From IMG/VR virus record IMGVR_UViG_3300044641_009805, positions 62,001 through 126,000 of that record: a DNA stretch of 64,000 nt; one strand, given 5' to 3'. Made by a program: the position numbers and the translations under genes. Numbering within the stretch: the first letter of the stretch is position 1; each line of letters begins with the position of its first letter. Below are positions 9,810 to 39,942 of this stretch, piece after piece. The notes beneath the pieces are model-generated. The model made no database searches, was not told where the DNA came from, and worked only from the letters and a program-made list of their open reading frames with translations.

Positions 9810-10136
9810 ATGAAACTGACCACGAAACAGCTAAGAAGCTTGATCAACGAAGTCCTTGAAGAAGAAGGAGTGACACCGGCCATGACCACCGACCAACTCA
9901 AGGAGATCGCGGCGGAACTCACCAAGGCGGAGAAGGCGGCCTTCCTCAACGCCCGGCCTTACCCCCCGGATGGTCGGGTCCAACTGCCTTCGGGCCGGGT
10001 CCTCGACGTCGGCTCTTGGGAAGCCGCCATGGAACTCAACACCCTCGTCATGTTGCCGCAGAAGAAGATCGGAACAGGCCGAGGTGGTCTGAAGGGTCGC
10101 CCGGCCTGGCTGAAAAAAGCGCTCGGCTACTACTGA
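9810..10136 (+). CDS. Hypothetical protein with MKLT..QLR.LI.E N-terminal motif
   Basis: MKLTTKQLRSLINEVLEEE; promoter copy 9776. Confidence 0.8.
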   Translation: MKLTTKQLRSLINEVLEEEGVTPAMTTDQLKEIAAELTKAEKAAFLNARPYPPDGRVQLPSGRVLDVGSWEAAMELNTLVMLPQKKIGTGRGGLKGRPAWLKKALGYY

Positions 10137-10175
10137 GCGGTGCAAAGTCAACCTCGAACAGGATAAGGTAGAACC

Positions 10176-10397
10176 ATGGACAACATCAAGATCTTCGTGG
10201 TGCAGCAGGGTGCAATGTCCTATTCCAACGTCGACGAGGTCACCTACGTGTTCCTCAACGAGGCGGACGCTCGGGTCAAGTACGCGTACCTCCTCGAGAA
10301 CCGGGTGGTCGAGTGCGACTCTTACGACAGGACCTGGACTTCCCTCCACGCGGTGACTCCTGGCGACGAGGTGTCGCAGGACAACAAGATCGCCTGA
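10176..10397 (+). CDS. Hypothetical protein, leaderless
   Basis: Promoter copy 10141. Confidence 0.75.
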   Translation: MDNIKIFVVQQGAMSYSNVDEVTYVFLNEADARVKYAYLLENRVVECDSYDRTWTSLHAVTPGDEVSQDNKIA

Positions 10398-10433
10398 GTG
10401 CAAAGTCAACCTCGAACAGGATAAGGTAGAACC

Positions 10434-10751
10434 ATGAACATCATCGAGTACGTCTCCGGCGGCCGTAGGTACCGGGCCACCCTCGTCCCTGGGAAGCACA
10501 TCATCGTGGAGTGCTTCCGGGATGATCAGTTCGTCTCCATGCGGAAGTTCGAGGTCGGCGATGTGGCCGAGTACGACTCCTTCAACCTCCGCTACACCGC
10601 GCCCATCGTCTCCATCGGCAAGTCCACGGTCACGTTCAATGTGTACGACAGCAAGAGGCGCCTCAAGGCTGAGAACTTCGCCTGGCGCAATTGGAACTTC
10701 AACGCCGAGGAGATCGCCCGTCGGAACGCGGAGACGAGCCAGCACATCTGA
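10434..10751 (+). CDS. Hypothetical protein, leaderless
   Basis: Promoter copy 10399 (identical to 10141). Confidence 0.8.
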   Translation: MNIIEYVSGGRRYRATLVPGKHIIVECFRDDQFVSMRKFEVGDVAEYDSFNLRYTAPIVSIGKSTVTFNVYDSKRRLKAENFAWRNWNFNAEEIARRNAETSQHI

Positions 10752-10792
10752 ACCCGGTGCAAAGTTCGACCGTGATAGGGTATACTAGGACC

Positions 10793-11035
10793 ATGAACAA
10801 GTTCGATGCTTTCGCGGCCAAGGCGAAGATCCTCGGGGAGATGCTGGAGACCGTCGGCAAGCTGCGGGACTCCGACCTGGAGAAGCTCGTGGCGCCGATG
10901 GAAGGCATGACGGTGTGGTCCCACGACGATGTTGAGTCGCTGACTGACTCGATCAACCACCTCTTCGAGGAGCTGATGATGCTCCAGGAAGAACTCCAGT
11001 CCTTCACCAGCCCGGCTGAGAGGTCGAGTGGCTGA
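10793..11035 (+). CDS. Hypothetical protein, leaderless
   Basis: ATG 6 nt after TATACT (10781-10786). Confidence 0.75.
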   Translation: MNKFDAFAAKAKILGEMLETVGKLRDSDLEKLVAPMEGMTVWSHDDVESLTDSINHLFEELMMLQEELQSFTSPAERSSG

Positions 11036-11039
11036 CCCA

Positions 11040-11117
11040 GGATGACCCAGGAGAGGCCCTGAGAATTCCCGGTGGGGTAACCTCCGCCTCGAACCTCCGG
11101 CCTCTCCTGGGTCATCC
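11040..11117. repeat. 78-bp palindromic element, copy 3
   Basis: Same 17-bp arms, N44, GGTAACC at 11076-11082. Confidence 0.95.
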
Positions 11118-11174
11118 TCGAGGGAGTGCAAGGGGACGGTGCAAAGTTCCACCGGAGAGGGATAAGATGGACCC

Positions 11175-11705
11175 ATGACAGTGATATCGTGGATCGCCCT
11201 CCTCGTCGCCATAGTGGCCCTTGCTGACTCGCAAGAGACTCGAGCACGCCTCAAGACACTCAGCCGCATCCCCGGTCCACGAGGGCTCCGAGGTCTACGT
11301 GGGGCGCCAGGACCGAGAGGAGAGGCCGGAGAGGTAGGCCCATGTGGCCCACCAGGACCCCAAGGTGAAACAGGTCCCCAAGGAACCCCAGGCATTCCTG
11401 GGCCAAAGGGAGACCCAGGAGACGGTGGGCCAATGGGACCCCAAGGCCCGACAGGGGAAGCAGGACCCAAGGGTGAGACCGGTCTAACGGGTGACCAGGG
11501 TCCAAGCGGCCCAACAGGTCCCCAGGGTCCTCGAGGTGAGGCAGGACCGACCGGACCCCAAGGTGATATGGGACCACCTGGCCCACGGGGAGAAGTGGGA
11601 CCTAGAGGTCCCCAGGGCTTCAAGGGTGAGTCCAGCGGACCGGCCGAACGGGAACTCCTCGCCCATTGGGCCCACGAGGCACTGAAGCCCCGAGGCGAAG
11701 AATGA
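11175..11705 (+). CDS. Membrane-anchored collagen-like protein
   Basis: N-terminal hydrophobic [14 protein letters not shown] followed by a long uninterrupted Gly-X-Y tract. Confidence 0.85.
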
Positions 11706-11751
11706 CACGAGATCGGTGCAAAGTCACCCCTGAATAGGGTATACTGGGACC

Positions 11752-11949
11752 GTGAAGATCATCTACCTGTTGTTCAGCGACGTGACCTTCGGGACCCACG
11801 AGCACGGCTTCATCCCGCGCAAAGTCGTTCAGGATCCGGACGACGAGGACGCCCGCTACGAGCGCCACCTGAAGTCCAAGGGCATCAATGCCCGTGTGTA
11901 CGACGGCAAGGTGAAGCTCCTTGAGCCCGGGGAAAAGTTCACGATCTGA
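11752..11949 (+). CDS. Hypothetical protein, leaderless (GTG)
   Basis: GTG 6 nt after TATACT. Confidence 0.7.
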   Translation: MKIIYLLFSDVTFGTHEHGFIPRKVVQDPDDEDARYERHLKSKGINARVYDGKVKLLEPGEKFTI

Positions 11950-11985
11950 GTGCAAAGTTCAACCTCGAAAGGATATACTAGGATC

Positions 11986-12213
11986 ATGAACAACGCAATC
12001 CAACCCGGCGATCGAGTCATCCTCTCCCCCGTCAACGGCCTCGGGTGCAGTGCCTTCCTCGTCCTGGAGGTCGACCCCAACGTGCATCCGACCCACCGCC
12101 TCTACGTCGAAGGCCGGAATGGCCAGCGCTGGTGGGCCCGGATCGAGGGAGCGCGGATCCTCCCGGAGGAACCTGAGGGGAACTTCACCTCGAGCCGTCA
12201 CGGCGATTGGTGA
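11986..12213 (+). CDS. Hypothetical protein, leaderless
   Basis: ATG 6 nt after TATACT. Confidence 0.75.
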   Translation: MNNAIQPGDRVILSPVNGLGCSAFLVLEVDPNVHPTHRLYVEGRNGQRWWARIEGARILPEEPEGNFTSSRHGDW

Positions 12214-12267
12214 GAAAAAGCCCTCCATCCGGTGCAAAGTCAACCCCGAACGAGGTAAGGTAGAACC

Positions 12268-12462
12268 ATGGACACCGCATTCGAAGTCTTCATCTCCGAC
12301 ACCATCCATGGCACCTCCGACCGTCGGGCATACAAGACCCGGGAGCGGGCCGTGGCTCGGTACGAGGAGCTGACGCGGAACCACAAACGCAATGGCCACT
12401 CCGCCGTGATCCTCCGCCAGGGCAAAGCACAGATCTTCCCGGCACCGATCTGCGGCCGCTGA
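12268..12462 (+). CDS. Hypothetical protein, leaderless
   Basis: ATG 6 nt after TAAGGT. Confidence 0.75.
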   Translation: MDTAFEVFISDTIHGTSDRRAYKTRERAVARYEELTRNHKRNGHSAVILRQGKAQIFPAPICGR

Positions 12463-12498
12463 GTGCAAAGTTCACAGAGGAAAGGATATACTAGGACC

Positions 12499-12714: not shown

Positions 12715-12753
12715 CCGGTGCAAAGTTCGACTCCGAAAGGATATACTAAGACC

Positions 12754-12936: not shown

Positions 12937-12988
12937 AAAAGTTCACCCCTCGGTGCAAAGTTCGACCCCGAAAGGATAAGGTAGAACC

Positions 12989-13521: not shown

Positions 13522-13527
13522 CCGGTT

Positions 13528-14007: not shown

Positions 14008-14295
14008 ATGAAGCTAACGTCAGAACAACTACGCATCATCATCGACGACGTCATCGCCGAGGACCTCAAGAACGTCCGCGGCAAACACGAACACACCATC
14101 GCAGGCACCACCGCCCTTCGACGAATGCACGATGCGCCCGGCGTACTCGAGGCGCTATCACAGATCACGGACCCCAAAGAACTGGCGCAGGTCATCGAGG
14201 CCATCATCGACGCGGTGCCCATGGTCAAACGCGGCGACGTCCTGGAAACATTGGCGAAGGTGACGCGCCACGAACGATCAACGCGGAGGTTCTGA
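14008..14295 (+). CDS. Hypothetical protein with MKLT motif
   Basis: MKLTSEQLRIIIDDVIAE; preceded by GATATATAT. Confidence 0.75.
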   Translation: MKLTSEQLRIIIDDVIAEDLKNVRGKHEHTIAGTTALRRMHDAPGVLEALSQITDPKELAQVIEAIIDAVPMVKRGDVLETLAKVTRHERSTRRF

Positions 14296-14296
14296 C

Positions 14297-15096: not shown

Positions 15097-15474
15097 ATGA
15101 AGCTGACGCTGCCGAGATTGAGACAGATCATCAAAGAAGAACTTGAGACGCTGACGGGAGGAGATGGGCCTGGGGGACAGTGGAGGCTCACGGCAGAGCC
15201 TGCGATGGACATTTTGGCGGATGAGGCGGCGTCAAATCCTGCTCTCGTGTACGACGCGAATCCTGATGTGGATGAGACTCGTGAGGGCGTCCTTTCCAGG
15301 TTGAGTGATCCTGAAACGGGCGCGTTCGTGGAGCTCTCTCTAAGAGAGACCGACCAAGTTGTCGTGCGCTGGGCAGCCTCGAGGGCGCGCCCCAAGGTCA
15401 GCGTTTTGAAAGGCGATTCTCGTGACGACCGTACCATGATGGACGTGATGGACGACGCCTTTGGTGGCGTCTGA
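15097..15474 (+). CDS. Hypothetical protein with MKLT motif
   Basis: MKLTLPRLRQIIKEELE; AGGAG SD; GATATATAT upstream. Confidence 0.8.
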   Translation: MKLTLPRLRQIIKEELETLTGGDGPGGQWRLTAEPAMDILADEAASNPALVYDANPDVDETREGVLSRLSDPETGAFVELSLRETDQVVVRWAASRARPKVSVLKGDSRDDRTMMDVMDDAFGGV

Positions 15475-21018: not shown

Positions 21019-21345
21019 TCAAGAACCTGTTTTAATCTGTTTTATTAACCCAATGATAGACTGGATATCTCCTGGATCAGATATTATGATCTTTAAGAAA
21101 GCCGTTCCTAACGCTTGTCTTTCCATCTTGTCGATAAGTTTTTCGTCGCTTATAGCAGCAGCTGCATCTTTAGATTTTGCCACGTCTTTTATTGCCGAAG
21201 CTAGTTTTGTTGCATTCGCTTCGGGGGCTAACTTTTGAAGTTTGGTGCGTAATTGATCTATAGGTCCTTCGACTTCTCCTGCTTCGTGAATGTTCTTTAT
21301 TTCTTCTAGTATGATCTTGCGTAGCTGACGTTCTGTTAATTTCAT
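21019..21345 (-). CDS. Hypothetical protein with MKLT motif
   Basis: MKLTERQLRKIILEEIKNIHEA; AAGGA SD. Confidence 0.8.
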   Translation of the reverse strand: MKLTERQLRKIILEEIKNIHEAGEVEGPIDQLRTKLQKLAPEANATKLASAIKDVAKSKDAAAAISDEKLIDKMERQALGTAFLKIIISDPGDIQSIIGLIKQIKTGS

Positions 21346-23517: not shown

Positions 23518-24315
23518 TTACTTTACGATTCCTGCAAGACGCTGCCAACGCTCAACAATTATATTTCCATCATTGTGAAGAGATTCTTTTTTTGTCTCTG
23601 AATTTAATTTTATGACTACTAATGGCGCGCTTCTTTCACCTCCCGCATATTTCAAGATAGTGCTTGAGGGCTGTTCCATGTTCAAAGAGATTTTTTCTTG
23701 CATCTTTTCTCCCAATGCTTCTGTCACGCCTTCTCTTTTTTGTTTTTTAGCATGAATTGCTTGAAATGAATCTACACACTCGTTCCAAAAATCAACAAAT
23801 GTTTTACCAATAGATTGAGCTGCTTCCAACTTCCCAGTTTTTTCATAAAAGTTAGCCCATCCATATACGGTTTTTGGTTCGTAATTTTTATCATATCCAG
23901 AGACAGAAGAAGGCGGATTATCATCCATGAAATTTTTAGGTGCTAACAACCCTTTAAAACTTTCCCCAAACCCAATTGCGTACACAGCATCACTCTTGGG
24001 TAAAACACGCGTCAAAGATACTCTTCCTTGAGGAGTTAAGTCTATTCTTATACCGCTACGGACTTGTGTTGAAAAGTCCTTAAAATGAGCATTTACAGCT
24101 TTTTCGTACTGTTGCTGTCTATCGTTACATATTTTTTCAAACTCTTCAAAAGACTTGACTGCTGGTAAGATTTCTTCTTTAGGTTCTTCTTTTTTTCCAC
24201 TAAAAGCGCTTTTTATCGTGTCAAAAAAACCTTCTTTTGTTAACTCGGTTTTTTTAGTTTGTTGTGATATTTCTTCTACAACTAGTTCTCTAAGTCTTGA
24301 TTTCGTTAACTTCAT
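23518..24315 (-). CDS. Putative internal head protein (MKLT N-terminus, ERWQRLAGI C-terminus)
   Basis: MKLTKSRLRELVVEEI...VERWQRLAGIVK; directly downstream of the major capsid gene. Confidence 0.7.
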   Translation of the reverse strand: MKLTKSRLRELVVEEISQQTKKTELTKEGFFDTIKSAFSGKKEEPKEEILPAVKSFEEFEKICNDRQQQYEKAVNAHFKDFSTQVRSGIRIDLTPQGRVSLTRVLPKSDAVYAIGFGESFKGLLAPKNFMDDNPPSSVSGYDKNYEPKTVYGWANFYEKTGKLEAAQSIGKTFVDFWNECVDSFQAIHAKKQKREGVTEALGEKMQEKISLNMEQPSSTILKYAGGERSAPLVVIKLNSETKKESLHNDGNIIVERWQRLAGIVK

Positions 24316-24441: not shown

Positions 24442-26328
24442 TCAGATGATGTTCATGTCGAGAACCGTGACCGTTCCGTAGAAGTCCGAACGGACCATCT
24501 TCTTACCGTAGCGGGTCATCACGCCCTTACGTGGTGTGAAGTCCTCTGGTGCGAAGATTGTTGGTGTCACGATGAGTGGAACGTATGGTGCGTATACGTA
24601 GCCTGTCTCGAGGTAGCTGCCACCCTTGTAACCGACGAGGATCTTGTTACGTGGGAAGTAAGGATCCTTGTAGACCGTGAAGCGGTTGCTGACCGTGCCG
24701 ATTGCCTCTGCACCGATTGTGAAGGGGCTGCCGACCTGACCTTCACCGTCGATCGAGAACTTGGGCTTGTAGAGGACCGAGCTCTCGAGGATTGTTGCAA
24801 CGTCTGGTCCTGTGACCATGAAGTTTGCTGATCCGCGGAGTGTCTTGCGGTGGATCGTGTTGGCAACGTCGATGACTGTCTCAACGAGCGTCTCATACCA
24901 CTCGCGAACCGTACCGGTGAATTGTGGTCCGATTGAGAGGCTTGAGGCGAGTGTTACAGGCTGTCCTGTTGTCTTGTTGACGAACTTACCAGGAGCGCGT
25001 GACCAGTAGTAGTTGGCGCCGTTGGCCTGTGTGACGAGGTCGTTGAGGATCTCGCGGTCGATCTCGAGGGCGATCTGCTCCGAGAGGATCGAGGTGAGCT
25101 CAACCTCTGCGTCCATGCTGTGGTAGGCGTTGAGGTCCTGTGCGAGCTCTGGTGACCAGCGAGCACGGAGCTTGCGGGTTGTTGCTGTGATTGCAATCGA
25201 CTCGATCTTGATGTCGATCTCTGGGATTGCTGGTGCTGGTGTTGCTCCGAAGTCAGACTCGAATGAAGGTACTGTGAGAGTTGCACCAGTCGAAGCGACT
25301 TCGAGTGAAGCTGCCTTCGAGAAGGTGACTCGTCCAGCGCCTGAAGTGAGAACTGACAATCCATTTGCTCCCTTGATAACGAATTGGAGATAGTTACCAT
25401 TCAATGCATCAGGAGTGAATGTATGTGCTGATGTACCGCCACCCGTGAGAGTGCCGCGCTTCGTGAGTCTACGGAGGTTGAGTACGCCTGTTCCTCCTTG
25501 GAATGTCTCGCCCCATGCTGTTGCGTTTGCTCCGAATCCGCTGAATACCGCGACCTGTTCAGCCGAGAGGAGGTCTGCTCCTGCTGCGGTGAATGCCGTC
25601 GTAGGAACGTAAACGAAGAGCGCATCGAGCTGATTGGCTTCGATAGAATTCTGAACCTGCGAATCAAAATCCATGAGACGTGCGTTCGAGCCGCTGAAGT
25701 CAGCTAACGTTGCAACGGTTGCACCGTTTGACCAGGTGAGTCCGTCAACTCCCTTGTATGAACCTGAGTAGACCGTGCCTGCTGAGAAGTCGAATGTCTG
25801 AAGTGAACCAGTTACTTTTGAGTAACCTGCTCCGACAAGATCATACATACCACCCGTCGCGAGTGATCCGCTTTGAACCCCTCTGCCTGTTGGGTTGTTG
25901 TAGATTGATTGACCTCTTGTATAGGTCGACTCTCCTGATGCTCCTACTGCCTGTCCAACGTTCGTACCGTATGTGTAATCGAGGTAGAAGATGAGACCTG
26001 AGGGGAGGCTCATTGGCTGGATCGAAACGAGCTCGTTTGAAACGAGACCGCCGAATACGCGGCGGACGATTGGGAATGCGATGTTTGTGAAGCCCTGGAT
26101 CTGTCCGCTGGATGTCACGTTGCCGCCGCCTGTTGAGAGGCTGTTGCTCTCCTTGAGGACCTGTGCTGCCTGGTTCTCAAGAAGCTGTGCCATTACTTCG
26201 CGACGTGTGCCATCGAGGCCACGGAGGAGGCCTGTGCGGCTCCACTTCTCTGTAAGACGGGCACGCTCGGCGCCTACGTGACGCTCTTTGATGCCCTGTG
26301 CAAGCTGATCAATTGTAAAAGATTTCAT
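24442..26328 (-). CDS. Major capsid protein (T4 gp23-like)
   Basis: QPMSLPSGLIFYL, TRKLRARWSPELAQDLNAYH, EIDREIL, YAPYVPL, FTPRKGVMTRYG. Confidence 0.97.
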   Translation of the reverse strand: MKSFTIDQLAQGIKERHVGAERARLTEKWSRTGLLRGLDGTRREVMAQLLENQAAQVLKESNSLSTGGGNVTSSGQIQGFTNIAFPIVRRVFGGLVSNELVSIQPMSLPSGLIFYLDYTYGTNVGQAVGASGESTYTRGQSIYNNPTGRGVQSGSLATGGMYDLVGAGYSKVTGSLQTFDFSAGTVYSGSYKGVDGLTWSNGATVATLADFSGSNARLMDFDSQVQNSIEANQLDALFVYVPTTAFTAAGADLLSAEQVAVFSGFGANATAWGETFQGGTGVLNLRRLTKRGTLTGGGTSAHTFTPDALNGNYLQFVIKGANGLSVLTSGAGRVTFSKAASLEVASTGATLTVPSFESDFGATPAPAIPEIDIKIESIAITATTRKLRARWSPELAQDLNAYHSMDAEVELTSILSEQIALEIDREILNDLVTQANGANYYWSRAPGKFVNKTTGQPVTLASSLSIGPQFTGTVREWYETLVETVIDVANTIHRKTLRGSANFMVTGPDVATILESSVLYKPKFSIDGEGQVGSPFTIGAEAIGTVSNRFTVYKDPYFPRNKILVGYKGGSYLETGYVYAPYVPLIVTPTIFAPEDFTPRKGVMTRYGKKMVRSDFYGTVTVLDMNII

Positions 26329-26381: not shown

Positions 26382-28286
26382 TCACTTAGCTATGCCTGCG
26401 AGCTTTGCCCAACGCTCTGCTTCATAACCCTCGTTGAGGGGTTGTGCCGAAGCCGAACGTGTTGCCTGAGAAGAAGATCCAAGAACGCGACCTTCTGTTA
26501 CAGGCTTACGCGGAGCTGCCAATGTCTTGGCGAGGCTCTCATATACAAGCTTCACTTCGCGGAGCGTGGCTGCTTCATCGAGCTGCGCAATAACCTGCGA
26601 TTTCTGGCGCGAGGTTAAGGCTTCTGATTGAAGAAGCTTGTTCGTGAACATGAGCTTGGCGTTGAGCAGATTCGTTTCTGCCAACTTGTTGCGGAGCTGA
26701 ACATCGCCTGCGCTCGCACCAGGTTTCACGTTGCTATTAGAGCGAACGTTGCTTGGACGCTTTGCTTCAGCAAGCGCCTCTGAAAGTTTGTTGAATCGTT
26801 TAACAGATTCGTTGTAACGCTTTGCGAATCCCGTGTAGGCTGCCTTGTGAGCATCTCCATGACGAGCAATTTCCTTGCGTTCAGAAAGTGTGCGGGTCTT
26901 GTTGAACTTTGCTTTAGATGCCTCATAAAGGCGTGCTGCGCCGCGAGCTCTTGCACGGAGAGACTCTTGAAGCTTTAGCTCTGCGACCATCTGACGACGG
27001 ATTGACTCACACTTAGCTGCTTCGTCGGCAGGGTTTTCAGCTCCCTCTTCATCTTCGTCAGCTTCATTGACTGGAGAATCAGACTGGACATTTGGCTGCT
27101 CAGCTCCTGAAGGCTTTGTTAATGAATCAGTTCTTTTAGCTGCTTCACCCTCTACGCCATAGGCTTCGTAGGTCTCATCCGTCATGCTAGCTTCGTCGAC
27201 TTCACTCAATGTCATCTCAAGAGGCTCGCCTTCTTCTTCGGCGTCGCCGAAGTCGTCAAACTCATCTGATCCAGGGGCTTCTCCCTTGGTTGAAGGAACT
27301 GCCTCTTCACGAATAGCCTTCATGCGTGCAATTTCACGACGTAACATGCCTTCGTCGATCTCGACAATCAAATTATCGTTGAGACGACGAGATTCTGTCG
27401 TCGGCATATTAGGCATAGACATTTCTTCCATGTCTTCTTCGTCCTCAGCGCCTTCTTCGTCATCTCCGCCGAGGTCTTCCATGTCATCGCCACCCTCTTC
27501 CTCGCCACCGAGGTCTTCCATGTCTTCGCCTGCTTCTTCGTCTTCCTCTTCGCCGCCTCCGGAGACCAAATTGACTCCAAGGCTCTCGAGGTCGACGTCG
27601 TCAGGAACTCCTGTTAATTCAATGCTAATTGTTTCTTCATCCAAACGACCATTTCTCTTCTTCATTTTAATCTCCTGAAGCTTTTCTAGTTTTTTTAAGC
27701 AATTCTGTATTTTAAGGTTACAGCTCAACTTTTGAGTTGAACTTACGATACGCGTGTTTGCATGTTCATAAAGCTCTGAGATCGTTTCTTCAAGAGAAGA
27801 GACTTTGTTTTCAAAGCTTTTTGATTCTTTCATGCTTTGTTCAATTGATGATAACGAATCGATCATCTTTTCGACATAGCGTAACTTTTCTTCAAATTCG
27901 CGGAGCGTTTCGTTCTTGCTCTTCGACGCGATTATCTCCATGACATCTTCAAGCGTTACCTCGGAAGCGGTTTGGTCCTCTTCAACTTTTTTCTCATCTT
28001 CTTCTGAGGTTAATTCGCCAATTGACATGGACATTTCGTTATTTTTAGCTTCAGGTCCTTTTTTAGTAGGATCATCTGTCAATATTTTATCATGATTTTT
28101 ATCATCATGATCATCCTCCGCAGACATGTCTGCGGAGGATTCTTCCAATAACTCTTTTTCTATCAGCTCACGAATTCGTGGAGCAACTGCCTCGATAACT
28201 GCTCTTTTAGCGTTATCTTCAGCTATTTCTTTTAGTTTTTTTACGTCTGCTATTGCTTCTTCGTAGAGCTGTTTAGACATTTTCAA
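26382..28286 (-). CDS. Prohead core/scaffolding protein
   Basis: Acidic coiled coil immediately upstream of the capsid gene; LAETNLLNAKLMFTNKL; many [LIV]xE sites; ends ERWAKLAGIAK. Confidence 0.8.
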   Translation of the reverse strand: MKMSKQLYEEAIADVKKLKEIAEDNAKRAVIEAVAPRIRELIEKELLEESSADMSAEDDHDDKNHDKILTDDPTKKGPEAKNNEMSMSIGELTSEEDEKKVEEDQTASEVTLEDVMEIIASKSKNETLREFEEKLRYVEKMIDSLSSIEQSMKESKSFENKVSSLEETISELYEHANTRIVSSTQKLSCNLKIQNCLKKLEKLQEIKMKKRNGRLDEETISIELTGVPDDVDLESLGVNLVSGGGEEEDEEAGEDMEDLGGEEEGGDDMEDLGGDDEEGAEDEEDMEEMSMPNMPTTESRRLNDNLIVEIDEGMLRREIARMKAIREEAVPSTKGEAPGSDEFDDFGDAEEEGEPLEMTLSEVDEASMTDETYEAYGVEGEAAKRTDSLTKPSGAEQPNVQSDSPVNEADEDEEGAENPADEAAKCESIRRQMVAELKLQESLRARARGAARLYEASKAKFNKTRTLSERKEIARHGDAHKAAYTGFAKRYNESVKRFNKLSEALAEAKRPSNVRSNSNVKPGASAGDVQLRNKLAETNLLNAKLMFTNKLLQSEALTSRQKSQVIAQLDEAATLREVKLVYESLAKTLAAPRKPVTEGRVLGSSSQATRSASAQPLNEGYEAERWAKLAGIAK

Positions 28287-28830: not shown

Positions 28831-29067
28831 TCACTTGTTTCGAAGAGCTCTTTTTGCTTCACGAATTTTCTCTAAACGTTTCACTAATCTAGCTTCTTCA
28901 AGACCAAGTGCCTTGTAATAATTATGAGGATTCTCAATAGTATCTGCAAATTCATCAGCATCTACTTCTTCGGCATCTTTTGCTGCATCTTCTGTGCTAC
29001 GTTCTGCCTTAAATTTTGCGACCTCTTGCATGATGATTCTCTTCAACAAATTCGATGTTAGTTTCAT
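28831..29067 (-). CDS. Small head-module protein with MKLT motif
   Basis: MKLTSNLLKRIIMQEV; AAGGTG SD. Confidence 0.75.
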   Translation of the reverse strand: MKLTSNLLKRIIMQEVAKFKAERSTEDAAKDAEEVDADEFADTIENPHNYYKALGLEEARLVKRLEKIREAKRALRNK

Positions 29068-29124: not shown

Positions 29125-29550
29125 TCAAAATTTCTTTGATGTGTCCATAAACGCTAGCGCTGCCCATTTCGACGCTGCTTCATCCCCAAATAGTTCTTCT
29201 GGATTTGTAGAAGCTACGATTCTTTCTACAGAACCAACCGGTTGTGGTGTGTGATTGTGACCTTCATTCATTAACATGTTTGGTAGTGTAGTTGAAGCTG
29301 TGTCAGCTAAAATTGCAGCAAGAATAGGATCACCTTTAGACTCTGTCTTTATGACTTCGCTTATTCTTTTCTTATCCATTATCTGATTTCTTTGGCCATA
29401 AGAAATCATATCAGCAGGTTTTTTATGCACTTTTTTTTCTTGAAAAGCGAATGACTCTTTTAATTTTGTGGAATTTCCCATGCCTTCGGATAAAATTTCC
29501 ACAAGACATTCTTTCACTAGATCTTTCAGTTCATTACGAGTCATTTTCAT
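29125..29550 (-). CDS. Head-module protein with MKLT-like motif
   Basis: MKMTRNELKDLVKECLVEILSE. Confidence 0.78.
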   Translation of the reverse strand: MKMTRNELKDLVKECLVEILSEGMGNSTKLKESFAFQEKKVHKKPADMISYGQRNQIMDKKRISEVIKTESKGDPILAAILADTASTTLPNMLMNEGHNHTPQPVGSVERIVASTNPEELFGDEAASKWAALAFMDTSKKF

Positions 29551-29580: not shown

Positions 29581-30189
29581 TTACTTCTTTGTAGATAAAA
29601 TATCATTAATAATTCTATTGATTCTGTCAGAACGATTAAAAATTCCTCTTACCTCAGAGGGATTTATTGTTTTTCCTTCTGCCATCATGAACGCACCTGG
29701 TGTTGATGGTTCAGAAACATAGTCCCAACAGATCAATTGAAAATCATCTTGAACTATCTGATAATCGCCTTGCTTTTTTGTAGAACCAACTCCTCTAGAT
29801 GATATTCCTAATTTTACTCCGCTTTCGACTAAGGATTGTAGTATCTTACCAGAAGGGGTGTCTAGAATTTCCACGCTTCCATAGACGACATCTCCGTCTA
29901 AGTATGCTTCACGAACTATATGAGAAACATTTTTTAAATTTACCACTGAAGAATCAGGATGATCTAACTCTCCTAAAGCTCTATTTTCAGCTATAAACTT
30001 TTGATAGTTTCTTATTTCTCTTTCTAGAATATTTTTCGGGTAGATTCTGCCATTTTGATTCAAGGTATCTGCTTTTTGCAGAATACCTTTCATCAAGATT
30101 TTTCCATCGTTCTTTTCTCTGGACTCTTTTATAGTTTCAGAAGAATAATCAAATATTTCATAAGAATTTAAGAGTTTCAAGTCAGACAT
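29581..30189 (-). CDS. Prohead protease (T4 gp21-like)
   Basis: NQNGRIYP, ALGELDHP, VSH, GISSRGVGS, WDYVSEPS. Confidence 0.95.
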   Translation of the reverse strand: MSDLKLLNSYEIFDYSSETIKESREKNDGKILMKGILQKADTLNQNGRIYPKNILEREIRNYQKFIAENRALGELDHPDSSVVNLKNVSHIVREAYLDGDVVYGSVEILDTPSGKILQSLVESGVKLGISSRGVGSTKKQGDYQIVQDDFQLICWDYVSEPSTPGAFMMAEGKTINPSEVRGIFNRSDRINRIINDILSTKK

Positions 30190-31093: not shown

Positions 31094-33082
31094 TCAGTCT
31101 TCGATGTCAAGATCTAAAGCCGCTTCCTCGTTAGATTCTGTTAATAATCCTTCTTTATTTTTTTGAATCTTCAAAGCTACTGTCATCTTTTTTAGAGAAG
31201 ACATTACATCAGGAGGAAGACTTGTCACGTGATAAGTTTCGTTTATCGACTCTGATAATCCTAATGGATCTTTAAATTGGTTTTTTAACCACTTCGTATC
31301 ATACGGGTCATTCAACGCTTGATGAGTTGACGTCATTTTTACGAAATCTGGTTCATGTAGTTGCCATTTTTTTCTTCTAGAACTATCATACTGCGCTTTT
31401 TTATTGCTGTATTTAGTCTTATTTGATTTCTTTATGGGTAGCTTGTCTTTTTCGTATAAATTTGGCATTTGTTCGGGTTCATCTACCGATAATAGCAACT
31501 TTGCATCAGGAGATGCATCATCTGAAGGTTTATCTCCTGCAAATAATCCGCCTCCTCCGCCGCCTGCTTCTTCTTCTTCGCCTCCTGCTTCTTCTCCAGC
31601 AGGCGCTTCTTCTTCACCTCCGCCTGCTTCTTCTTCGCCACCAGCAGGCGCTTCTTCTTCACCTTCAGGTTTAGCAGCTTCTACTTCAGCATCAATGATC
31701 TTTTCTTGCTTTCTTTGTTCATTGATTGCAAGAATTTGTTCGTCATTCAATCCCCAAATTTCTTTTTGAATAAATCTTTTGCTTCCCATTCCTTCAGGTA
31801 AAGCACCACCTATTTCAAACTTTGATCTCCAGAGTTCTAGCTTCTGTTGTTGGGCAACAGTCGAAGGGTTAGAAAGACGTAAAGTAAAGTTTTGTAAATC
31901 TTCGTTGTCAAATCCATTTGCATAAAGATGTATAATCGCCAACTTATTAAGTTCAGAAACAATCGTCTTTTGAACCACATTTATCGTTCTAGAAAATCTG
32001 ATATCTTCTTGAGCTAATGTAGCTTTTGAAGACAACATTTCATCATATCCCAAATAAGCTCTTGGAATTTTTAATGCGGCAAATAGCTTTTTTTGAATGT
32101 AAGCTACATCTTCAACCGAAGCTGCATTTTGACCACCTGCCAAGGTGTCAATCTTTGTTCCGCTTTCTCCGCCTCTCACTGGAATGAAATAATCATCTTC
32201 TACACTCAAAGGAGAATATCTTAGATCGACCCTACCTGTGTTCCTATCAACAACTTGATTAGTTCTAAGGTTCTTTCTTTGTTCTTCAACGTACATTGGA
32301 ACGTTCTCGGCCGGAATATTCGCAACGTCTACGTAAAATACACGACGTTCTGGTGCGCGGACAACTCTATACACAAGCATAGCGTCTTCAAGAAGAATTA
32401 GTTGACGCCAGATTCTTCTGGCGGCTTCTATGACTGAAGATCCATAAGGTAGAAACATGTCATTTCCGATGTACCTAAAATGAGAAATTTCCCAATTTTC
32501 TAATGTTCTATTTCCCATAGTCGTCCAACGATATCTTACTGCAAATGGATCTTCTCTATCGTAATTTTCTTCTCTTTCAATTTCGTTTACTGGAATTGGG
32601 AATGCGTTGATAACTCCTTGCGTGGGAGATACATCATTATAGAGAAAGAAGTCTCCATACTTAACCAAATTTCTAGCCCATGAACGTAAGTTAAATTCTA
32701 CATTTAGAGTGTTGTAGAATAGATCTTCTAATATCTGTTTTATTTTTTCGTTATCTGAATAAATGTGAAGTACTCTACCCTTTTCATCTTGCGCGCATGT
32801 TTCGTCGGCGTAGATATCGAGCGCCGCAGCAATTTCAGGCGTATATTCCATCTCTGCAAAATCTTGATATCTCATCAAACGTTCTGACAAGTTATAAGAA
32901 TTTGCAGTTATAGTAGAATAAGTGGGAGACATTGAACGCTGAAACAACAAGGCCGCTGACGATTTAGCTTTGTCAGCAACCGCTATTGTAGTGTCTAATG
33001 TCCGAATCTTTCTCTTGACTACAGGACCGCTTTTAAATAAGCGAGTAAGACGCTGAAATAAATTTTTTTCTTCTTTTGCCAC
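31094..33082 (-). CDS. Portal protein (T4 gp20-like)
   Basis: QLILLEDAMLVYRVVRAPERRVFYVDV, EDDYFIPVRG, IDTLAGG, LFAALKIP; acidic Gly/Glu tail. Confidence 0.96.
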   Translation of the reverse strand: MAKEEKNLFQRLTRLFKSGPVVKRKIRTLDTTIAVADKAKSSAALLFQRSMSPTYSTITANSYNLSERLMRYQDFAEMEYTPEIAAALDIYADETCAQDEKGRVLHIYSDNEKIKQILEDLFYNTLNVEFNLRSWARNLVKYGDFFLYNDVSPTQGVINAFPIPVNEIEREENYDREDPFAVRYRWTTMGNRTLENWEISHFRYIGNDMFLPYGSSVIEAARRIWRQLILLEDAMLVYRVVRAPERRVFYVDVANIPAENVPMYVEEQRKNLRTNQVVDRNTGRVDLRYSPLSVEDDYFIPVRGGESGTKIDTLAGGQNAASVEDVAYIQKKLFAALKIPRAYLGYDEMLSSKATLAQEDIRFSRTINVVQKTIVSELNKLAIIHLYANGFDNEDLQNFTLRLSNPSTVAQQQKLELWRSKFEIGGALPEGMGSKRFIQKEIWGLNDEQILAINEQRKQEKIIDAEVEAAKPEGEEEAPAGGEEEAGGGEEEAPAGEEAGGEEEEAGGGGGGLFAGDKPSDDASPDAKLLLSVDEPEQMPNLYEKDKLPIKKSNKTKYSNKKAQYDSSRRKKWQLHEPDFVKMTSTHQALNDPYDTKWLKNQFKDPLGLSESINETYHVTSLPPDVMSSLKKMTVALKIQKNKEGLLTESNEEAALDLDIED

Positions 33083-33140: not shown

Positions 33141-33449
33141 TCAATCAACATCTTTAGTTGGTTTAAAAGTTACTCTTTGCTTTTCGGCCATTGTTGTTGA
33201 TTGTGGCACGTAGCTTGTAGGATTCTCTATCATTTTTTCAAGAGTGTCCTTCACGTTTTTTAAATGAGGAGTCAATGCATTAATAGCATCGGCGGTTGCA
33301 TTCTGTTCGAAATCTATGATTTCTTCATATAAATCTGCTGCAGAAGAAATTAAAGATTTTACCCCTGAAGAATCCACTCCTTCCATTAGTGCTTCTTTTT
33401 GTAGCAAAATTTTTGCATGAAGTTCAACAGAATTTAACTTTTTTGGCAT
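33141..33449 (-). CDS. Hypothetical protein
   Basis: ORF between terminase and portal. Confidence 0.7.
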   Translation of the reverse strand: MPKKLNSVELHAKILLQKEALMEGVDSSGVKSLISSAADLYEEIIDFEQNATADAINALTPHLKNVKDTLEKMIENPTSYVPQSTTMAEKQRVTFKPTKDVD

Positions 33450-38800: not shown

Positions 38801-38989
38801 CGTTAGTTGGTTGATGTATTCAGGAGAAATTCCTGATGTTTTTGTATGAAAGATATCACCACCAATGAAGATGTGGTCGACGCGGCTCTTCTTACAGTCA
38901 TTTATAAAAGCAGAAAATATCTCTCGATATTCATCATGTCGACTAAGCCCACGCCAGTGCACGTCTGCTGTATGCGCAATTCGTAGCAT
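35852..38989 (-). CDS. Fused Mre11/SbcD nuclease - Rad50/SbcC ATPase (gp47-gp46-like)
   Basis: DVH, GDIFH, GNHD, FHG, GDIH phosphoesterase motifs; Walker A GPNRIGKS, coiled coil, CSGME signature, Walker B FIIDEGFGTLD, ITH. Confidence 0.93.
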   Translation of the reverse strand: MLRIAHTADVHWRGLSRHDEYREIFSAFINDCKKSRVDHIFIGGDIFHTKTSGISPEYINQLTWWLNAMSEVAVVHIILGNHDGNLTNLSRQDAVSPIVDAMKNDRIKLYKKSGTYEFSPGYNWCVFSLFDEEGWKDVKPVPGMINIACFHGSVRGCVTETGWDITEGISTDFFNEYDFVFLGDIHKRQMLAYRDGKPWIGFPGTPIQQNYAEELDHGYLLWDIGSASNWDVKFCQLPNVKPYVTIDWQENHEKLINEALLYPKQSRFRIRSNVPMSQGDIQTISNQLKTTFQATEVTFKTDCKVETKKISTSDVVIEKSDIRSNEVILSLLRSYAKENKYSNVNWEAVENDVKKYLSLVTTTDDLARGSSWSLKQLKWDNIFAYGEGNEIDFSNLNGIVGIFGPNRIGKSSIIGTIMYSLFNTTDRGSMKNIYVCNVRKPYCSSRAIFEHNGKSYVVERQTTKQLNKKGGVSASTALNLFKINDDEAEDLGGEQRTDTEKIIRSLLGSPDDFLLTSFSAQGETNAFIALSSAKRRSLLSRFLDLDVFDKMYENCNKELNGFKARLKNYPEKDWDALKKQGEDLCIDLQKKIEDLQIKISDTQNLLTDVKYKLSLHKDLKPVTKIQLEAQEKKVSSLEKQAQECSSYIDSLKAEISSLTSKLETVNSFIESEDIDELKTKLTAIDSIEKSITSLKHSYELETATLKQQQKSLALLDEVPCGDEYPTCKFIKDAHLDKSKFQNQKEKEANIKASLDKAINSLNLLDKNSIISKISKYEKAVGLLSNIKLEISKKETEIEKCKSSCEICLENLKEAKTKLVDIQKALKNNENYEVVALRSKLEELSSIARDHDDEKIRLATQHGRALSDLEKLKSEKDSRESLIREMKSTEMICDAFSKKGLPLMITKTQLPVINQEISKILQGIVDFTVELENDDETDSTEIYINYGDSRRIIELCSGMEKTISSIAIRVALVNISTLPKLDMFIIDEGFGTLDESGVEACSRLLNSLKRYFKTILMITHVDGIKDMADHIIEITKQEKDSKVVVT

Positions 38990-39027
38990 TATCTAAATGT
39001 AACGTAGATAATGCGTATGTTCATATC

Positions 39028-39942
39028 TCATGCTCCGCTGACAATTTTTCGAACGTCAGCAAATCCTTTTGCTAGTTCGATACCTTTCACTGTTGTTGCA
39101 GTTCCCTCAACGAATCCTAACAATGATGCACCAGCTTTAAGCGCGCCTGCTAATCCTTGAAAAGCAAAATATATCAATAAAGCCTTATAGATTAATTCTG
39201 CTGTTTTTTGTTCTGACTTCGAAGATTTATATCTTTCGTAAGATAAAACTTCTTTTTCGCCAGCCGTGTGAAATCCTTTTTCAGCTAAAAACTTATATAC
39301 GAAATACGAAAGTTTGCTAGGGATTACAAATTTTATAAATTTTTGCTCAAAAGCGTGAGTAACATGTTCAGCTTTTTCAAAGATTGAAGCTAATTTTTCA
39401 GCTTTCAAATAGACAGCCAACTTAGTTAAGCCTTTAAATAACAAAGGTAAACCTCCGATGATCGCTAATCCTACTCCTACGCCAGCTATTATTCCTGCTT
39501 CATGTAAGTTTTTTCTTTGTTCGACGTAAGAATTATCGGACAATACAACATACATTTCTTTTAATTCTTTTGCTTTTGCGTAGATAGGACCAGATAATTC
39601 TTCTTCAGCAGAAGCAAGAGGATTTTCTTTACCGAGAGACTGAGCTAGCTTTAATGTTTCATCTAACTCTATTGATTCTCCTGTCGACTTCATTCCTTCT
39701 TTGAGTGCATTGACGATTGTCAATATCTCTGGAGGGATCGTCTGCATCATGTTTATCTTTTCAGAGATAACGTTTGCCCACTCGTTTGCCGCTTCCTTAA
39801 ATCTATTAGTAACTGCAACTGACAATTTTTTTATTGCATCTTTAGCAGAATCTAAAAATCCTTCTTCAAGGAGCTGTTGAATTGCTATTTCTTCTTGGAT
39901 TATTTCTCTAATCCTAGCTTCTGTAATTACGTACTTTCTCAC
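39028..39942 (-). CDS. Hypothetical protein with ITEARIREIIQEE motif and hydrophobic helices
   Basis: N-terminus resembles the MKLT family; GIIAGVGVGLAIIGGL segment. Confidence 0.75.
   Translation of the reverse strand: MRKYVITEARIREIIQEEIAIQQLLEEGFLDSAKDAIKKLSVAVTNRFKEAANEWANVISEKINMMQTIPPEILTIVNALKEGMKSTGESIELDETLKLAQSLGKENPLASAEEELSGPIYAKAKELKEMYVVLSDNSYVEQRKNLHEAGIIAGVGVGLAIIGGLPLLFKGLTKLAVYLKAEKLASIFEKAEHVTHAFEQKFIKFVIPSKLSYFVYKFLAEKGFHTAGEKEVLSYERYKSSKSEQKTAELIYKALLIYFAFQGLAGALKAGASLLGFVEGTATTVKGIELAKGFADVRKIVSGA

What the first reader, a model, noticed from the sequence alone, without database searches (positions are those of the whole stretch)
9810..39942. Shared N-terminal MKLT..(Q/R)LR.II.EE peptide on at least eight unrelated proteins
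Seen: MKLTTKQLRSLINEVLEE (9810), MKLTSEQLRIIIDDVIAE (14008), MKLTLPRLRQIIKEELE (15097), MKLTERQLRKIILEEI (21345-), MKLTKSRLRELVVEEI (24315-), MKLTSNLLKRIIMQEV (29067-), MKMTRNELKDLVKECL (29550-), VITEARIREIIQEEI (39942-). Downstream sequences are unrelated, and the genes lie in both GC-rich and AT-rich zones, three inside the head operon. Known: T4 internal proteins use a short N-terminal capsid-targeting sequence removed by gp21 after (I/L)-x-E, and a gp21-like protease is encoded here. Inference: a portable amphipathic-helix packaging tag that loads cargo into the prohead for injection.
Basis: partly seen in the sequence, partly recalled or inferred. Interest (0 to 1): 0.72.

Follow-up and report, generated by a model that had tools for sequence, protein, structure and literature searches.

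The report
Shared N-terminal head-targeting-like peptide tag
A distant T4-like jumbo phage puts the same ~16-residue N-terminal helix, ending in a T4-type protease cleavage motif, on about 25 otherwise unrelated small proteins; it looks like a new version of T4's capsid-targeting sequence, which would mean many proteins are loaded into the phage head.

Summary
Seven of the eight listed N-termini match a tag profile at 21-33 bits, where shuffled sequence reaches at most 8.7. The eighth (39942-) scores 6.5 bits, which is noise level.

- **Extent.** The 278-kb genome holds 25-26 tagged ORFs, all at N-termini. Related environmental phage contigs hold hundreds more, on at least 180 unrelated cargo families.
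- **Level of selection.** It acts on the protein: the invariant Leu8 uses all six Leu codons.
- **Protease link.** The tag is a predicted amphipathic helix with [LIV]-x-E ending at residue 14 in 20 of 26 copies. The phage encodes a T4 gp21-family protease with the T4-aligned His and Ser conserved. The capsid-protein propeptide keeps L-[KR]-E at the T4 gp23 cleavage position, and the scaffold is twofold enriched in [LI]xE.
- **Head link.** Tagged genes cluster with terminase, portal and protease genes.

Best reading (about 0.6): a non-homologous functional analogue of the T4 capsid targeting sequence, directing proteins into the prohead core and then cut off. Packaging, cleavage and injection are all untested, and most cargo is acidic, unlike the basic T4 internal proteins. 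I found no paper describing this tag. A cultured relative, Flavobacterium phage immuto, carries a shorter version and could be used for tests.

The parts
9810..10136 (+). Tagged ORF, 108 aa (MKLTTKQLRSLINEVLEE...), in the GC-rich zone (GC 0.60)
   Evidence: HMM 26-29 bits. TATATA lies 12 nt upstream. No Pfam family.
14008..14295 (+). Tagged ORF, 95 aa (MKLTSEQLRIIIDDVIAE...), GC 0.59
   Evidence: HMM 25-29 bits. TATATA lies 12 nt upstream. A variant copy in a near-identical IMG/VR contig has the canonical E14 (L139).
15097..15474 (+). Tagged ORF, 125 aa (MKLTLPRLRQIIKEELET...), followed by a Gly/Pro-rich linker
   Evidence: HMM 27-29 bits. TATATA lies 27 nt upstream.
21019..21345 (-). Tagged ORF, 108 aa (MKLTERQLRKIILEEIKN...)
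   Evidence: HMM 24-26 bits. No Pfam or PHROG family.
23518..24315 (-). Tagged ORF t265, 265 aa, immediately downstream of the major capsid gene. It carries the N-terminal tag and also the scaffold-type C-terminus (...ERWQRLAGIVK)
   Evidence: HMM 20.8 bits. C-terminal motif shared with the scaffold.
24442..26328 (-). Major capsid protein (gp23 family), with an N-terminal propeptide containing ...QVLKE|SNS
   Evidence: Pfam Gp23, E 3e-76. L-[KR]-E|[SA] is invariant in about 60 relatives at the position aligned with the T4 gp23 cleavage site.
26382..28280 (-). Putative scaffold (gp22 position): 632-aa acidic protein, apparently coiled-coil. It has a conserved N-terminal 48 residues with a tag-like helix (PRIRELIEKELLEE) and a conserved C-terminus RWAKLAGIAK
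   Evidence: Position and composition. Conservation across relatives. 4.3 [LI]xE per 100 aa against 2.0 expected from its own composition and 1.1 in the proteome.
28831..29067 (-). Tagged ORF t78, 78 aa, a conserved head-module protein (MKLTSxLLKKIIAEEVAKF... in relatives)
   Evidence: HMM 26-29 bits. Orthologues with the tag occur throughout the clade.
29125..29550 (-). Tagged ORF t141, 141 aa, a conserved head-module protein directly downstream of the protease. Order: tag, variable linker, then conserved ...SKWAxLAF C-terminus
   Evidence: HMM 24-27 bits. Family alignment.
29581..30189 (-). Prohead protease (T4 gp21 family, Peptidase_S77)
   Evidence: Pfam E 2.4e-28. 35% identical to T4 gp21, with the residues aligned to T4 His85 (ELDHP) and Ser140 (GISSRG) conserved.
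31094..33082 (-). Portal protein (gp20 family)
   Evidence: Pfam Portal_T4, E 6.6e-73.
33141..33449 (-). 102-aa ORF between portal and terminase with a degenerate tag (MPKKLNSVELHAKILLQKE...). The relatives' ORFs 8-9 kb upstream of the capsid gene carry a clear tag (M-PKLTISQLRKIISEEV...)
   Evidence: N-terminus read; tagged ORFs in the corresponding part of the relatives' loci (L024, L025, L045, L065). Below the HMM threshold in this genome. The equivalence rests on my reading of the two N-termini and on position, not on a computed alignment.
39028..39942 (-). A tag-like core (ARIREIIQEEI) lies 6 residues in from a GTG start. Not counted as a member
   Evidence: HMM 6.5 bits, inside the range of shuffles. 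Apparent hydrophobic segment; no homologue in two related genomes.

Best explanation
The peptide M-K-[LI]-[TRK]-x-x-[QE]-L-[RK]-x-[IL]-I-x-E-E-[VIL] is an N-terminal address label that directs otherwise unrelated proteins into the assembling prohead core of this T4-like phage. I take it to be a non-homologous functional analogue of the T4 capsid targeting sequence (CTS).

Proposed steps:
1. Tagged proteins are made. Several tagged genes share a TATATA element upstream; when they are expressed is not known.
2. The amphipathic tag helix docks onto the scaffold/core. Possibly it imitates the conserved scaffold helix PRIR[DE]LIExELL.
3. The capsid shell closes around the core.
4. The gp21-type protease cuts after Glu14 of the tag ([LIV]-x-E|), at the capsid-protein propeptide (L-[KR]-E|S), and many times within the scaffold.
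5. The freed cargo either stays in the head and leaves with the DNA, or, for the conserved head-module members t141, t78 and t265, acts as core or scaffold accessory protein.

Shown here: the tag, its portability, protein-level selection, the fixed [LIV]-x-E site, the conserved protease, the conserved capsid-protein site and the linkage to the head module. Inferred: steps 2 to 5.
For: - **Not chance.** 25-26 ORFs score above 12 bits against at most 8.7 in shuffles, all at N-termini.
- **Protein-level selection.** The invariant Leu8 uses all six Leu codons, Arg9 uses six codons, Ile12 uses three. Identical residues share a codon in only 41% of pairs.
- **Portable.** Only one paralogue trio among the 26 cargos. 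238 unique tagged proteins from this lineage fall into 180 BLASTP clusters, 142 of them singletons. Cargo includes a PAP2 phosphatase, an HTH protein, a DnaJ+WGR protein and a GNAT-like family. Untagged homologues of cargo domains exist.
- **Conserved.** The tag is more conserved than the cargo in 9 of 10 orthologue pairs, 68% against 48% identity.
- **Cleavage motif.** [LIV]-x-E ends at residue 14 in 20 of 26 tags. The protease is 35% identical to T4 gp21 and keeps the residues aligned with T4 His85 and Ser140. L-[KR]-E is invariant at the site aligned with T4 gp23 cleavage. The scaffold is twofold enriched in [LI]xE.
- **Architecture.** In the AlphaFold2 model of g45015 (pLDDT 85.7) the tag is helix 5-21, residues 17-22 are a low-confidence hinge, and the globular domain starts near residue 30.
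- **Head linkage.** Three tagged genes lie between protease and capsid genes. Their orthologues keep the tag in the IMG/VR relatives whose loci cover that region. An exact-pattern scan of IMG/VR gave 107 loci where far fewer than one is expected by my estimate. 93 of them share other genes with this phage: TerL in 41, portal in 36, protease in 21.
- **Lineage-specific.** 21, 10, 7 and 4 copies in four related contigs and 22 in a 484-kb phage; none in T4; 3-5 in Flavobacterium phage immuto.
- **Precedent.** The T4 CTS is a 10-19-residue N-terminal propeptide with separate targeting and processing residues, and it packages foreign proteins (PMC9026906, PMC3012670).
Against: - There is no direct evidence that any tagged protein is in a virion or is cleaved. 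The clade is known mainly from metagenomes.
- The complex prediction (scaffold N-terminus plus tag) gave no verdict, so it counts neither for nor against.
- The tag has no sequence similarity to the T4 CTS MKTYQEFIAE, and the tag profile finds nothing in T4.
- Most cargo is acidic (median pI 5.35; 16 of 26 below pI 6). The T4 internal proteins are basic and DNA-associated (PMC3012670, PMC9026906).
- Cargo is not depleted in internal [LI]xE: 1.46 per 100 aa against 1.14 in the proteome. Survival of the cargo after protease action is therefore not implied.
- Six of 26 tags lack [LIV]-x-E at position 14.
- No detectable homology of t141 to T4 gp68 or of t78 to gp67.
Confidence: 0.6

Rival explanations
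1. The tag docks proteins onto a shared hub unrelated to the capsid. Candidates: the phage-encoded GroEL-type chaperonin (inside the main cluster of tagged genes) or a host chaperone; a host AAA+ protease, making the tag an N-terminal degron that limits protein lifetime; or the membrane, bound through the amphipathic helix.
For: - A GroEL-like gene, judged from its N-terminal sequence only (genome 37335-38957), lies inside the 30-49 kb cluster of tagged genes.
- One tagged protein in a relative is a DnaJ-domain protein.
- The tag is a short amphipathic helix starting Met-basic-hydrophobic. From my own memory of the N-terminal ClpX motifs (Flynn et al. 2003), this loosely resembles them.
- Most tagged genes lie outside the head module in this genome.
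Against: - This reading does not explain the fixed [LIV]-x-E site that matches the specificity of the phage's own head protease.
- It does not explain why three or four of the most conserved tagged genes are in the head morphogenesis module.
- It does not explain the proximity of tagged genes to TerL, portal and protease across the lineage.
- It does not explain why t265 and t141 also carry the scaffold-type C-terminal motif.
Confidence: 0.2
2. The tagged proteins are all prohead-core or scaffold building blocks. The tag is a scaffold co-assembly helix, and the proteins are degraded and expelled at maturation like T4 gp22. Nothing is delivered to the host.
For: - Most cargo is acidic, like scaffolds.
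- The scaffold has a tag-like helix of its own.
- t141 and t265 share the scaffold C-terminal W-A-x-L-A motif.
- Cargo is not depleted in [LI]xE.
Against: - The cargo repertoire is very diverse and turns over fast: 180 clusters, 142 singletons. About half of this genome's cargos have no homologue in two related genomes. That is the pattern expected of arms-race effectors, not of structural parts.
- Some cargos have enzyme or regulator domains: PAP2, HTH, a GNAT-like fold, DnaJ.
Confidence: 0.12
3. The shared N-terminus is a leftover of common descent: one expanded paralogous family whose C-terminal parts have diverged beyond recognition. It has no addressing role.
For: Tagged genes occur in tandem clusters, e.g. 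genome 45-49 kb and the tandem arrays in L126, L137 and L143. That is typical of local duplication.
Against: - Cargos belong to different Pfam families or folds (PAP2, HTH_8, DnaJ+WGR, GNAT-like) and range from 59 to 366 aa.
- Within one cargo family the N-terminus switches between the full tag and a different short helix that also ends in L-x-E.
- The tag is more conserved than the rest of the protein, which indicates a function of its own.
Confidence: 0.05
4. The conservation is at the nucleotide level: a translation-initiation element, an RNA structure or a recombination site at the start of these genes.
For: Many tagged genes lack an obvious Shine-Dalgarno sequence, and some have TATATA only 12-31 nt upstream. 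Short or absent leaders are therefore possible.
Against: Synonymous codons vary freely at the conserved residues: six Leu codons at position 8, six Arg codons at position 9. The tag persists in genes of 32% and of 60% GC.
Confidence: 0.02

Closest known systems
Capsid targeting sequence (CTS) of T4 internal proteins IPI, IPII and IPIII (Mullaney and Black 1996; reviewed in PMC9026906 and PMC3012670)
   Same: A short N-terminal propeptide on otherwise unrelated proteins. It ends in the gp21 consensus (L/I)-x-E. The phage encodes a gp21-family protease. The loci carrying tagged genes are variable. Conserved positions fall into an upstream part (K2, L8, R9 here; residues 4 and 7 in T4) and a processing part (I12 and E14 here; residues 8 and 10 in T4).
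   Different: No sequence similarity: MKTYQEFIAE (verified in T4) against MK[LI]TxxQLRxIIxEE, and the tag profile finds nothing in T4. The tag is longer, about 16 residues against 10. There are far more carriers, about 25 per genome against three internal proteins named in T4. Tags have diverged at the DNA level, whereas the ipII and ipIII CTS are identical over 30 nt. Cargo is mostly acidic rather than basic. Packaging is untested here.
T4 prohead core proteins gp22, gp67 and gp68
   Same: t141 (141 aa) and t78 (78 aa) are small proteins encoded next to the protease, with sizes close to gp68 (141 aa) and gp67 (80 aa). The 632-aa acidic protein upstream of the capsid gene occupies the gp22 position and is rich in L/I-x-E. 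The T4 gp22 N-terminus (MLKEQLIAEA) resembles the T4 CTS, just as this scaffold has a tag-like helix.
   Different: No detectable homology: hhalign probability 0.1-0.2%; no Pfam or PHROG hits. Gene order differs: here they follow the protease, in T4 genes 67 and 68 precede it.
Propeptides of head and ejection proteins in phiKZ-like giant phages such as SPN3US and 201phi2-1 (PMC5694885, PMC7411985)
   Same: Many head-internal proteins are trimmed by a prohead protease that cuts after Glu in an x-x-E context (the motif is from my memory of the phiKZ-group literature), and a large protein mass is packaged with the DNA (PMC7411985).
   Different: To my knowledge those propeptides share no conserved address sequence. 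The protease and capsid lineage differ. Here one short, recognisable motif is shared by all carriers.
P1 Dar antirestriction proteins and encapsulin cargo-loading peptides (functional analogues)
   Same: Short terminal peptides or N-terminal regions direct diverse proteins to the interior of an HK97-fold shell. P1 is discussed in PMC9024508, which I found in a search but did not read. The encapsulin comparison is from my own knowledge.
   Different: The lineages are unrelated. Encapsulin peptides are usually C-terminal and bind the shell protein directly. No protease removal is involved.

Membership tests
T4-type capsid targeting sequence (CTS) system | Short (10-19 aa) peptide at the extreme N-terminus of the carrier | tested here: met
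   All 25-26 hits start at or within 5 residues of the start codon. The conserved block is about 16 residues.
T4-type capsid targeting sequence (CTS) system | Carried by proteins that are otherwise unrelated (portable) | tested here: met
   One paralogue trio among 26 cargos. 180 clusters among 238 tagged proteins of the lineage. Different Pfam families.
T4-type capsid targeting sequence (CTS) system | Ends in the prohead protease consensus (L/I)-x-E | tested here: met
   [LIV]-x-E ends at residue 14 in 20 of 26 tags.
T4-type capsid targeting sequence (CTS) system | Genome encodes a gp21-family prohead protease with the catalytic residues intact | tested here: met
   Peptidase_S77, E 2.4e-28. 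35% identical to T4 gp21. The residues aligned with T4 His85 and Ser140 are conserved; their catalytic role is from my memory of the gp21 literature.
T4-type capsid targeting sequence (CTS) system | Sequence similarity to the T4 CTS (MKTYQEFIAE) | tested here: not met
   The tag profile finds nothing in the T4 genome. The T4 CTS was verified at ipII and ipIII and shares only Met-Lys and the I-x-E ending with this tag.
T4-type capsid targeting sequence (CTS) system | Carrier is incorporated into the prohead core and the tag is removed by the protease | not testable with these tools
   This needs virion proteomics or N-terminomics, or a packaging assay. The complex prediction of tag with scaffold gave no verdict.
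T4-type capsid targeting sequence (CTS) system | Cargo is small, basic and DNA-associated, and is injected with the DNA | tested here: not met
   Cargo is small (59-265 aa) but mostly acidic: median pI 5.35, only 5 of 26 above pI 8. Injection cannot be tested here.
T4 prohead core proteins gp67/gp68 | Detectable homology of t78 to gp67 and of t141 to gp68 | tested here: not met
   hhalign probability 0.2% and 0.1%. Only size and neighbourhood agree.

The most novel reading that the evidence does not exclude
A cosmopolitan freshwater and marine lineage of T4-like large phages uses one 16-residue N-terminal label, evolved independently of the T4 CTS and perhaps imitating a scaffold helix, to load dozens of fast-evolving proteins per genome into the head and deliver them with the DNA. 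That is about 7% of the genes in this genome and at least 180 sequence families across the lineage. The tag would then give a sequence-only way to read out a large, unexplored injected proteome of candidate host-takeover or anti-defence effectors from metagenomes. It would also be a second, orthogonal tag for packaging foreign proteins into phage heads.
Probability: 0.4. Interest if true: 0.8.

Novelty: new variant of a known kind. Interest (0 to 1): 0.68.

Why it matters
The papers I read describe the capsid-targeting principle only for T4 and its close relatives, for a handful of internal proteins. If this tag works the same way, three things follow.

- **Generality.** The principle would be a recurrent solution across the wider T4 superfamily, reached with an unrelated sequence and used on a much larger scale.
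- **Effector discovery.** Packaged proteins could be listed directly from sequence in uncultured phages. I counted hundreds of candidates in at least 180 families. They include a PAP2 phosphatase, an HTH protein, a DnaJ-domain protein and a GNAT-like family. These are candidates for early-acting host-takeover or counter-defence proteins.
- **Mechanism and tools.** The resemblance between the tag and a conserved scaffold helix suggests a testable way the tag is recognised. A short orthogonal tag would also be useful for loading proteins into phage capsids.

Tried and rejected
- **Complex prediction** (two copies of the scaffold N-terminal 55 residues plus the first 30 residues of a tagged protein): score 0.05, no verdict. 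It is not evidence either way.
- **Homology of t141 and t78 to T4 gp68 and gp67:** hhalign probability 0.1-0.2%. Rejected; only size and position agree.
- **PHROGs** on ten proteins (head-module proteins, tagged and untagged, plus other tagged proteins): no family. **Pfam** on 20 of the 26 tagged proteins of this genome: PAP2 and HTH families were the only matches above their curated cut-offs.
- **DEK_C:** the weak Pfam hit covering the tag of g35507 (16.5 bits, cut-off 24.8) is taken as a chance helix resemblance.
- **g47125 family:** the protein atlas gave a weak DarT/PARP lead at 0.86. The AlphaFold2 model had low confidence (pLDDT 60.8) and Foldseek found nothing significant. Its function stays unknown.
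- **g45015 family:** the GNAT-like assignment rests on atlas features and on consistent but weak structural hits (Foldseek E 0.014, VIA Z at most 4.8). It is a lead only.
- **Nucleotide-level element:** rejected by codon diversity.
- **T4-type late promoter TATAAATA:** only 7 copies in the genome, none upstream of a called gene.
- **megablast of the head region** against GenBank phages: no match. **tblastn with a 20-aa tag:** too short to be informative, one hit at E = 9.
- **Literature:** three full-text searches found no description of this motif.
Full report
**Context**

The window is bases 62001-126000 of a single 278,435-bp contig. Its GC content is strongly heterogeneous, from 0.30 to 0.62.

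The contig is a distant member of the T4 superfamily. On the minus strand the window carries these genes:
- portal, gp20 family (31094-33082)
- prohead protease, gp21/Peptidase_S77 family (29581-30189)
- major capsid protein, gp23 family (24442-26328)
- large terminase (33496-35139)

The nearest GenBank phages by capsid protein are:
- Microcystis phage Mel-JY01 (35% identity)
- Flavobacterium phage immuto (43%)
- a 484-kb uncultured phage, LR756508.1 (52%)

IMG/VR holds many closer relatives, with capsid identity of 64-100%.

I built a profile HMM from the first 18 residues and scanned every six-frame ORF of the genome.
- Seven of the eight score 20.8-32.6 bits.
- Five residue-shuffled proteomes give best scores of only 5.7-8.7 bits.
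- The eighth (39942-) scores 6.5 bits. It begins six residues in from a GTG start and sits on a protein with an apparent hydrophobic segment. I do not count it.

The scan found 18-19 further copies outside the window. The total is 25-26, all at ORF N-termini. They cluster at genome positions 30-49 kb, 71-92 kb and 215-255 kb. Degenerate variants also exist, such as ...LLREYIKE... and ...IYKRLLKEA..., and the ORF at 33141-33449 between portal and terminase.

**Protein or DNA signal?**
- The invariant Leu8 is encoded by all six Leu codons.
- Arg9 uses six codons, and Ile12 uses three in near-equal numbers.
- Residues that are identical between two tags share a codon only 41% of the time.
- The tag occurs in genes of 32% to 60% GC.

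Selection therefore acts on the peptide.

**Is the cargo unrelated?**

With the tag removed, BLASTP links only one paralogue trio among the 26. Pfam recognises a PAP2 phosphatase domain (g46431-) and an HTH (g42115+), and nothing else. PHROGs recognises nothing.

I pooled tagged proteins from this genome, two related 200-kb contigs and 107 IMG/VR loci. The 238 unique proteins fall into 180 clusters, of which 142 are singletons.

Other observations on the cargo:
- One tagged protein in a relative is DnaJ+WGR.
- Untagged homologues of cargo domains exist in the same genomes.
- Within the g45015 family the N-terminus alternates between the full tag and a different short helix that also ends in L-x-E.
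- Where orthologues exist, the tag is more conserved than the rest of the protein in 9 of 10 pairs, 68% against 48% identity.

**Distribution**

| Genome or collection | Tag matches |
|---|---|
| Related contigs G001, G002, G003, G004 | 21, 10, 7 and 4 |
| LR756508.1 (484 kb) | 22 |
| T4 | 0 |
| Mel-JY01 | 1 weak match (E 0.23) |
| Flavobacterium phage immuto (cultured) | 3-5, in a shorter MKKSQLRxIIKE form |

I also scanned IMG/VR for exact matches to a degenerate 45-nt pattern encoding MKLTxxQLRxIIxEE. The pattern carries about 48 bits by my arithmetic, so far fewer than one match is expected by chance. It returned 107 loci.
- These loci contain 265 tags, and 66 of them hold two or more.
- 93 of the 107 share other genes with this phage.
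- TerL lies within the roughly 9-kb locus in 41 cases, portal in 36 and protease in 21.
- Random placement in a 200-kb genome would give about 5% by my estimate.
- The largest cargo cluster has only 10 members, so this linkage is not caused by one conserved orthologue.

**Link to the head protease**

The protease is 35% identical to T4 gp21. It keeps the residues that align with T4 His85 and Ser140; their catalytic role is from my memory of the gp21 literature. According to the T4 reviews, gp21 cuts after (L/I)-x-E (PMC9026906).
- [LIV]-x-E ends at tag residue 14 in 20 of 26 copies.
- The capsid-protein propeptide carries L-[KR]-E|[SA], invariant in about 60 relatives, at the position that aligns with the T4 gp23 cleavage site.
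- The putative scaffold (26382-28280) has 4.3 [LI]xE per 100 aa. Its composition predicts 2.0, and the proteome average is 1.1.

**Architecture**

The AlphaFold2 model of g45015 (pLDDT 85.7) shows three parts:
- the tag as helix 5-21
- a low-confidence hinge at residues 17-22
- a globular domain from about residue 30

That domain gives consistent but weak matches to GNAT and MYST acetyltransferases, which agrees with the protein-atlas lead. By eye, several tags are followed by Gly/Pro/Ser/Thr-rich stretches.

**The head module**

On the minus strand the order is:
portal, o289, protease, t141 (tagged), t78 (tagged), o164, scaffold, capsid, t265 (tagged).

- t141 and t78 keep the tag in the relatives whose loci cover that region.
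- The scaffold has a conserved N-terminal 48 residues containing a tag-like helix, PRIR[DE]LIExELL.
- The scaffold also has a conserved C-terminus, RW[AS]xLAG[IL]xK. The same ending is kept in immuto, and a related one (RMKKLAGIVK) in Mel-JY01.
- t265 shares that C-terminus, and t141 has a related SKWAxLAF.
- In T4, the gp22 N-terminus (MLKEQLIAEA) likewise resembles the CTS MKTYQEFIAE.

**Interpretation**

The best-supported reading is a CTS-like address label for the prohead core that is removed by the head protease. I regard it as an analogue and not a homologue of the T4 CTS, because the sequences are unrelated.

What is not shown:
- binding to the scaffold (the complex prediction gave no verdict)
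- cleavage of the tag
- presence of tagged proteins in virions
- injection into the host

Injection is the weakest step, for two reasons:
- Cargo is mostly acidic, with median pI 5.35, whereas the T4 internal proteins are basic.
- Cargo is not depleted in [LI]xE.

Some carriers, especially t141, t78 and t265, may therefore be core or scaffold accessory proteins instead of delivered effectors.

Rival readings are listed with their evidence in the Rival explanations section. They are a non-capsid hub (chaperone, degron or membrane), pure scaffold parts, a relic of paralogy, and a nucleotide element. The nucleotide reading is excluded.

**Novelty**

The T4 literature states the principle and anticipates that it may be general among T4-like phages (PMC9026906, PMC3012670). 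Three full-text searches found no description of this motif or of a CTS outside the T-even group.

I rate it a new variant of a known kind. It has a different sequence, roughly ten times as many carriers per genome, and a wide environmental distribution.

Noticed in passing
window 26382-26420 (scaffold C-terminus), 23518-23560 (t265 C-terminus), 29125-29180 (t141 C-terminus): A second shared signal at the C-terminus. The scaffold ends ...ERWAKLAGIAK, tagged t265 ends ...ERWQRLAGIVK, and tagged t141 ends ...SKWAALAF... The scaffold version is nearly invariant across about 75 relatives. Flavobacterium phage immuto keeps it (...SRWQKLAGIIK) and Microcystis phage Mel-JY01 has a related ...ERMKKLAGIVK. 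I think it is a coat-binding motif.
   Followed up: partly
window 9792-9797, 13990-13995, 15064-15069, 29090-29095; also upstream of genome 33243, 45015 and 218368: TATATA lies 12-31 nt upstream of 7 of 26 tagged genes, although the whole genome has only 47 copies (0.8% of positions expected). Most tagged genes lack an obvious Shine-Dalgarno sequence, whereas capsid, scaffold and protease genes have GGAG-type sites. This could be a dedicated promoter with very short leaders.
   Followed up: partly
window 16902-17735 (+): The phage encodes a sigma-70-family factor with regions 2 and 3. It could read the TATATA-type elements.
   Followed up: no
window 1-64000, especially 6000-16000 against 28000-64000: GC content swings from 0.60-0.62 to 0.30-0.35 inside one phage contig. 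Tagged genes occur in both zones. The GC-rich zone also holds a collagen-repeat ORF (11175-11705). The cause (mosaic acquisition or an assembly chimera) was not examined, but a near-identical IMG/VR contig (L139) covers both the GC-rich tagged genes at 14008 and 15097 and the AT-rich ones at 21345 and 24315.
   Followed up: partly
genome 45015-45713 (+), 47138-47821 (-), 30225-30896 (-), 42407-43237 (+) (outside the window; loci L002, L003): A four-member paralogous family. Two members carry the full tag, one a weak tag and one a variant N-terminus. It has invariant Cys, Asp-Asp-Cys and His positions and a confident AlphaFold2 model whose best structural matches are all GNAT or MYST acetyltransferases, but weakly (Foldseek E 0.014, Z at most 4.8).
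   Followed up: partly
genome 37335-38957 (+), 29019-30191 (-) (outside the window; locus L002): By eye from the N-terminal sequences only, a GroEL-like chaperonin gene sits inside the main cluster of tagged genes, and a YeaH/DUF444-like ORF sits next to it. Neither was checked against a family library.
   Followed up: no
L064:10663-11760 (+) (IMG/VR relative): A tagged protein whose tag is followed directly by a DnaJ J-domain (residues 19-79) and a WGR domain.
   Followed up: no
window 30182-31051 (-): A 289-aa ORF between portal and protease with a conserved N-terminus (...KKRNTGLIYEFL...). Similar N-termini are found in immuto and Mel-JY01 at the same position. No Pfam or PHROG family, so it is an unrecognised conserved head-module gene.
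   Followed up: no
window 250-1092 (+), 15605-16540 (+), 19045-20382 (+), 35852-38989 (-): Other annotatable genes: a Sir2-family protein, UV endonuclease UvdE, an ATP-dependent DNA ligase, and a fused SbcD/SbcC-like nuclease-ATPase.
   Followed up: no
L096:17110-17337 (Microcystis phage Mel-JY01): In Mel-JY01 a gene annotated as ribosomal protein S21 lies inside the head module, between the protease and the scaffold-like gene. That is the position held by tagged t78 in this phage.
   Followed up: no
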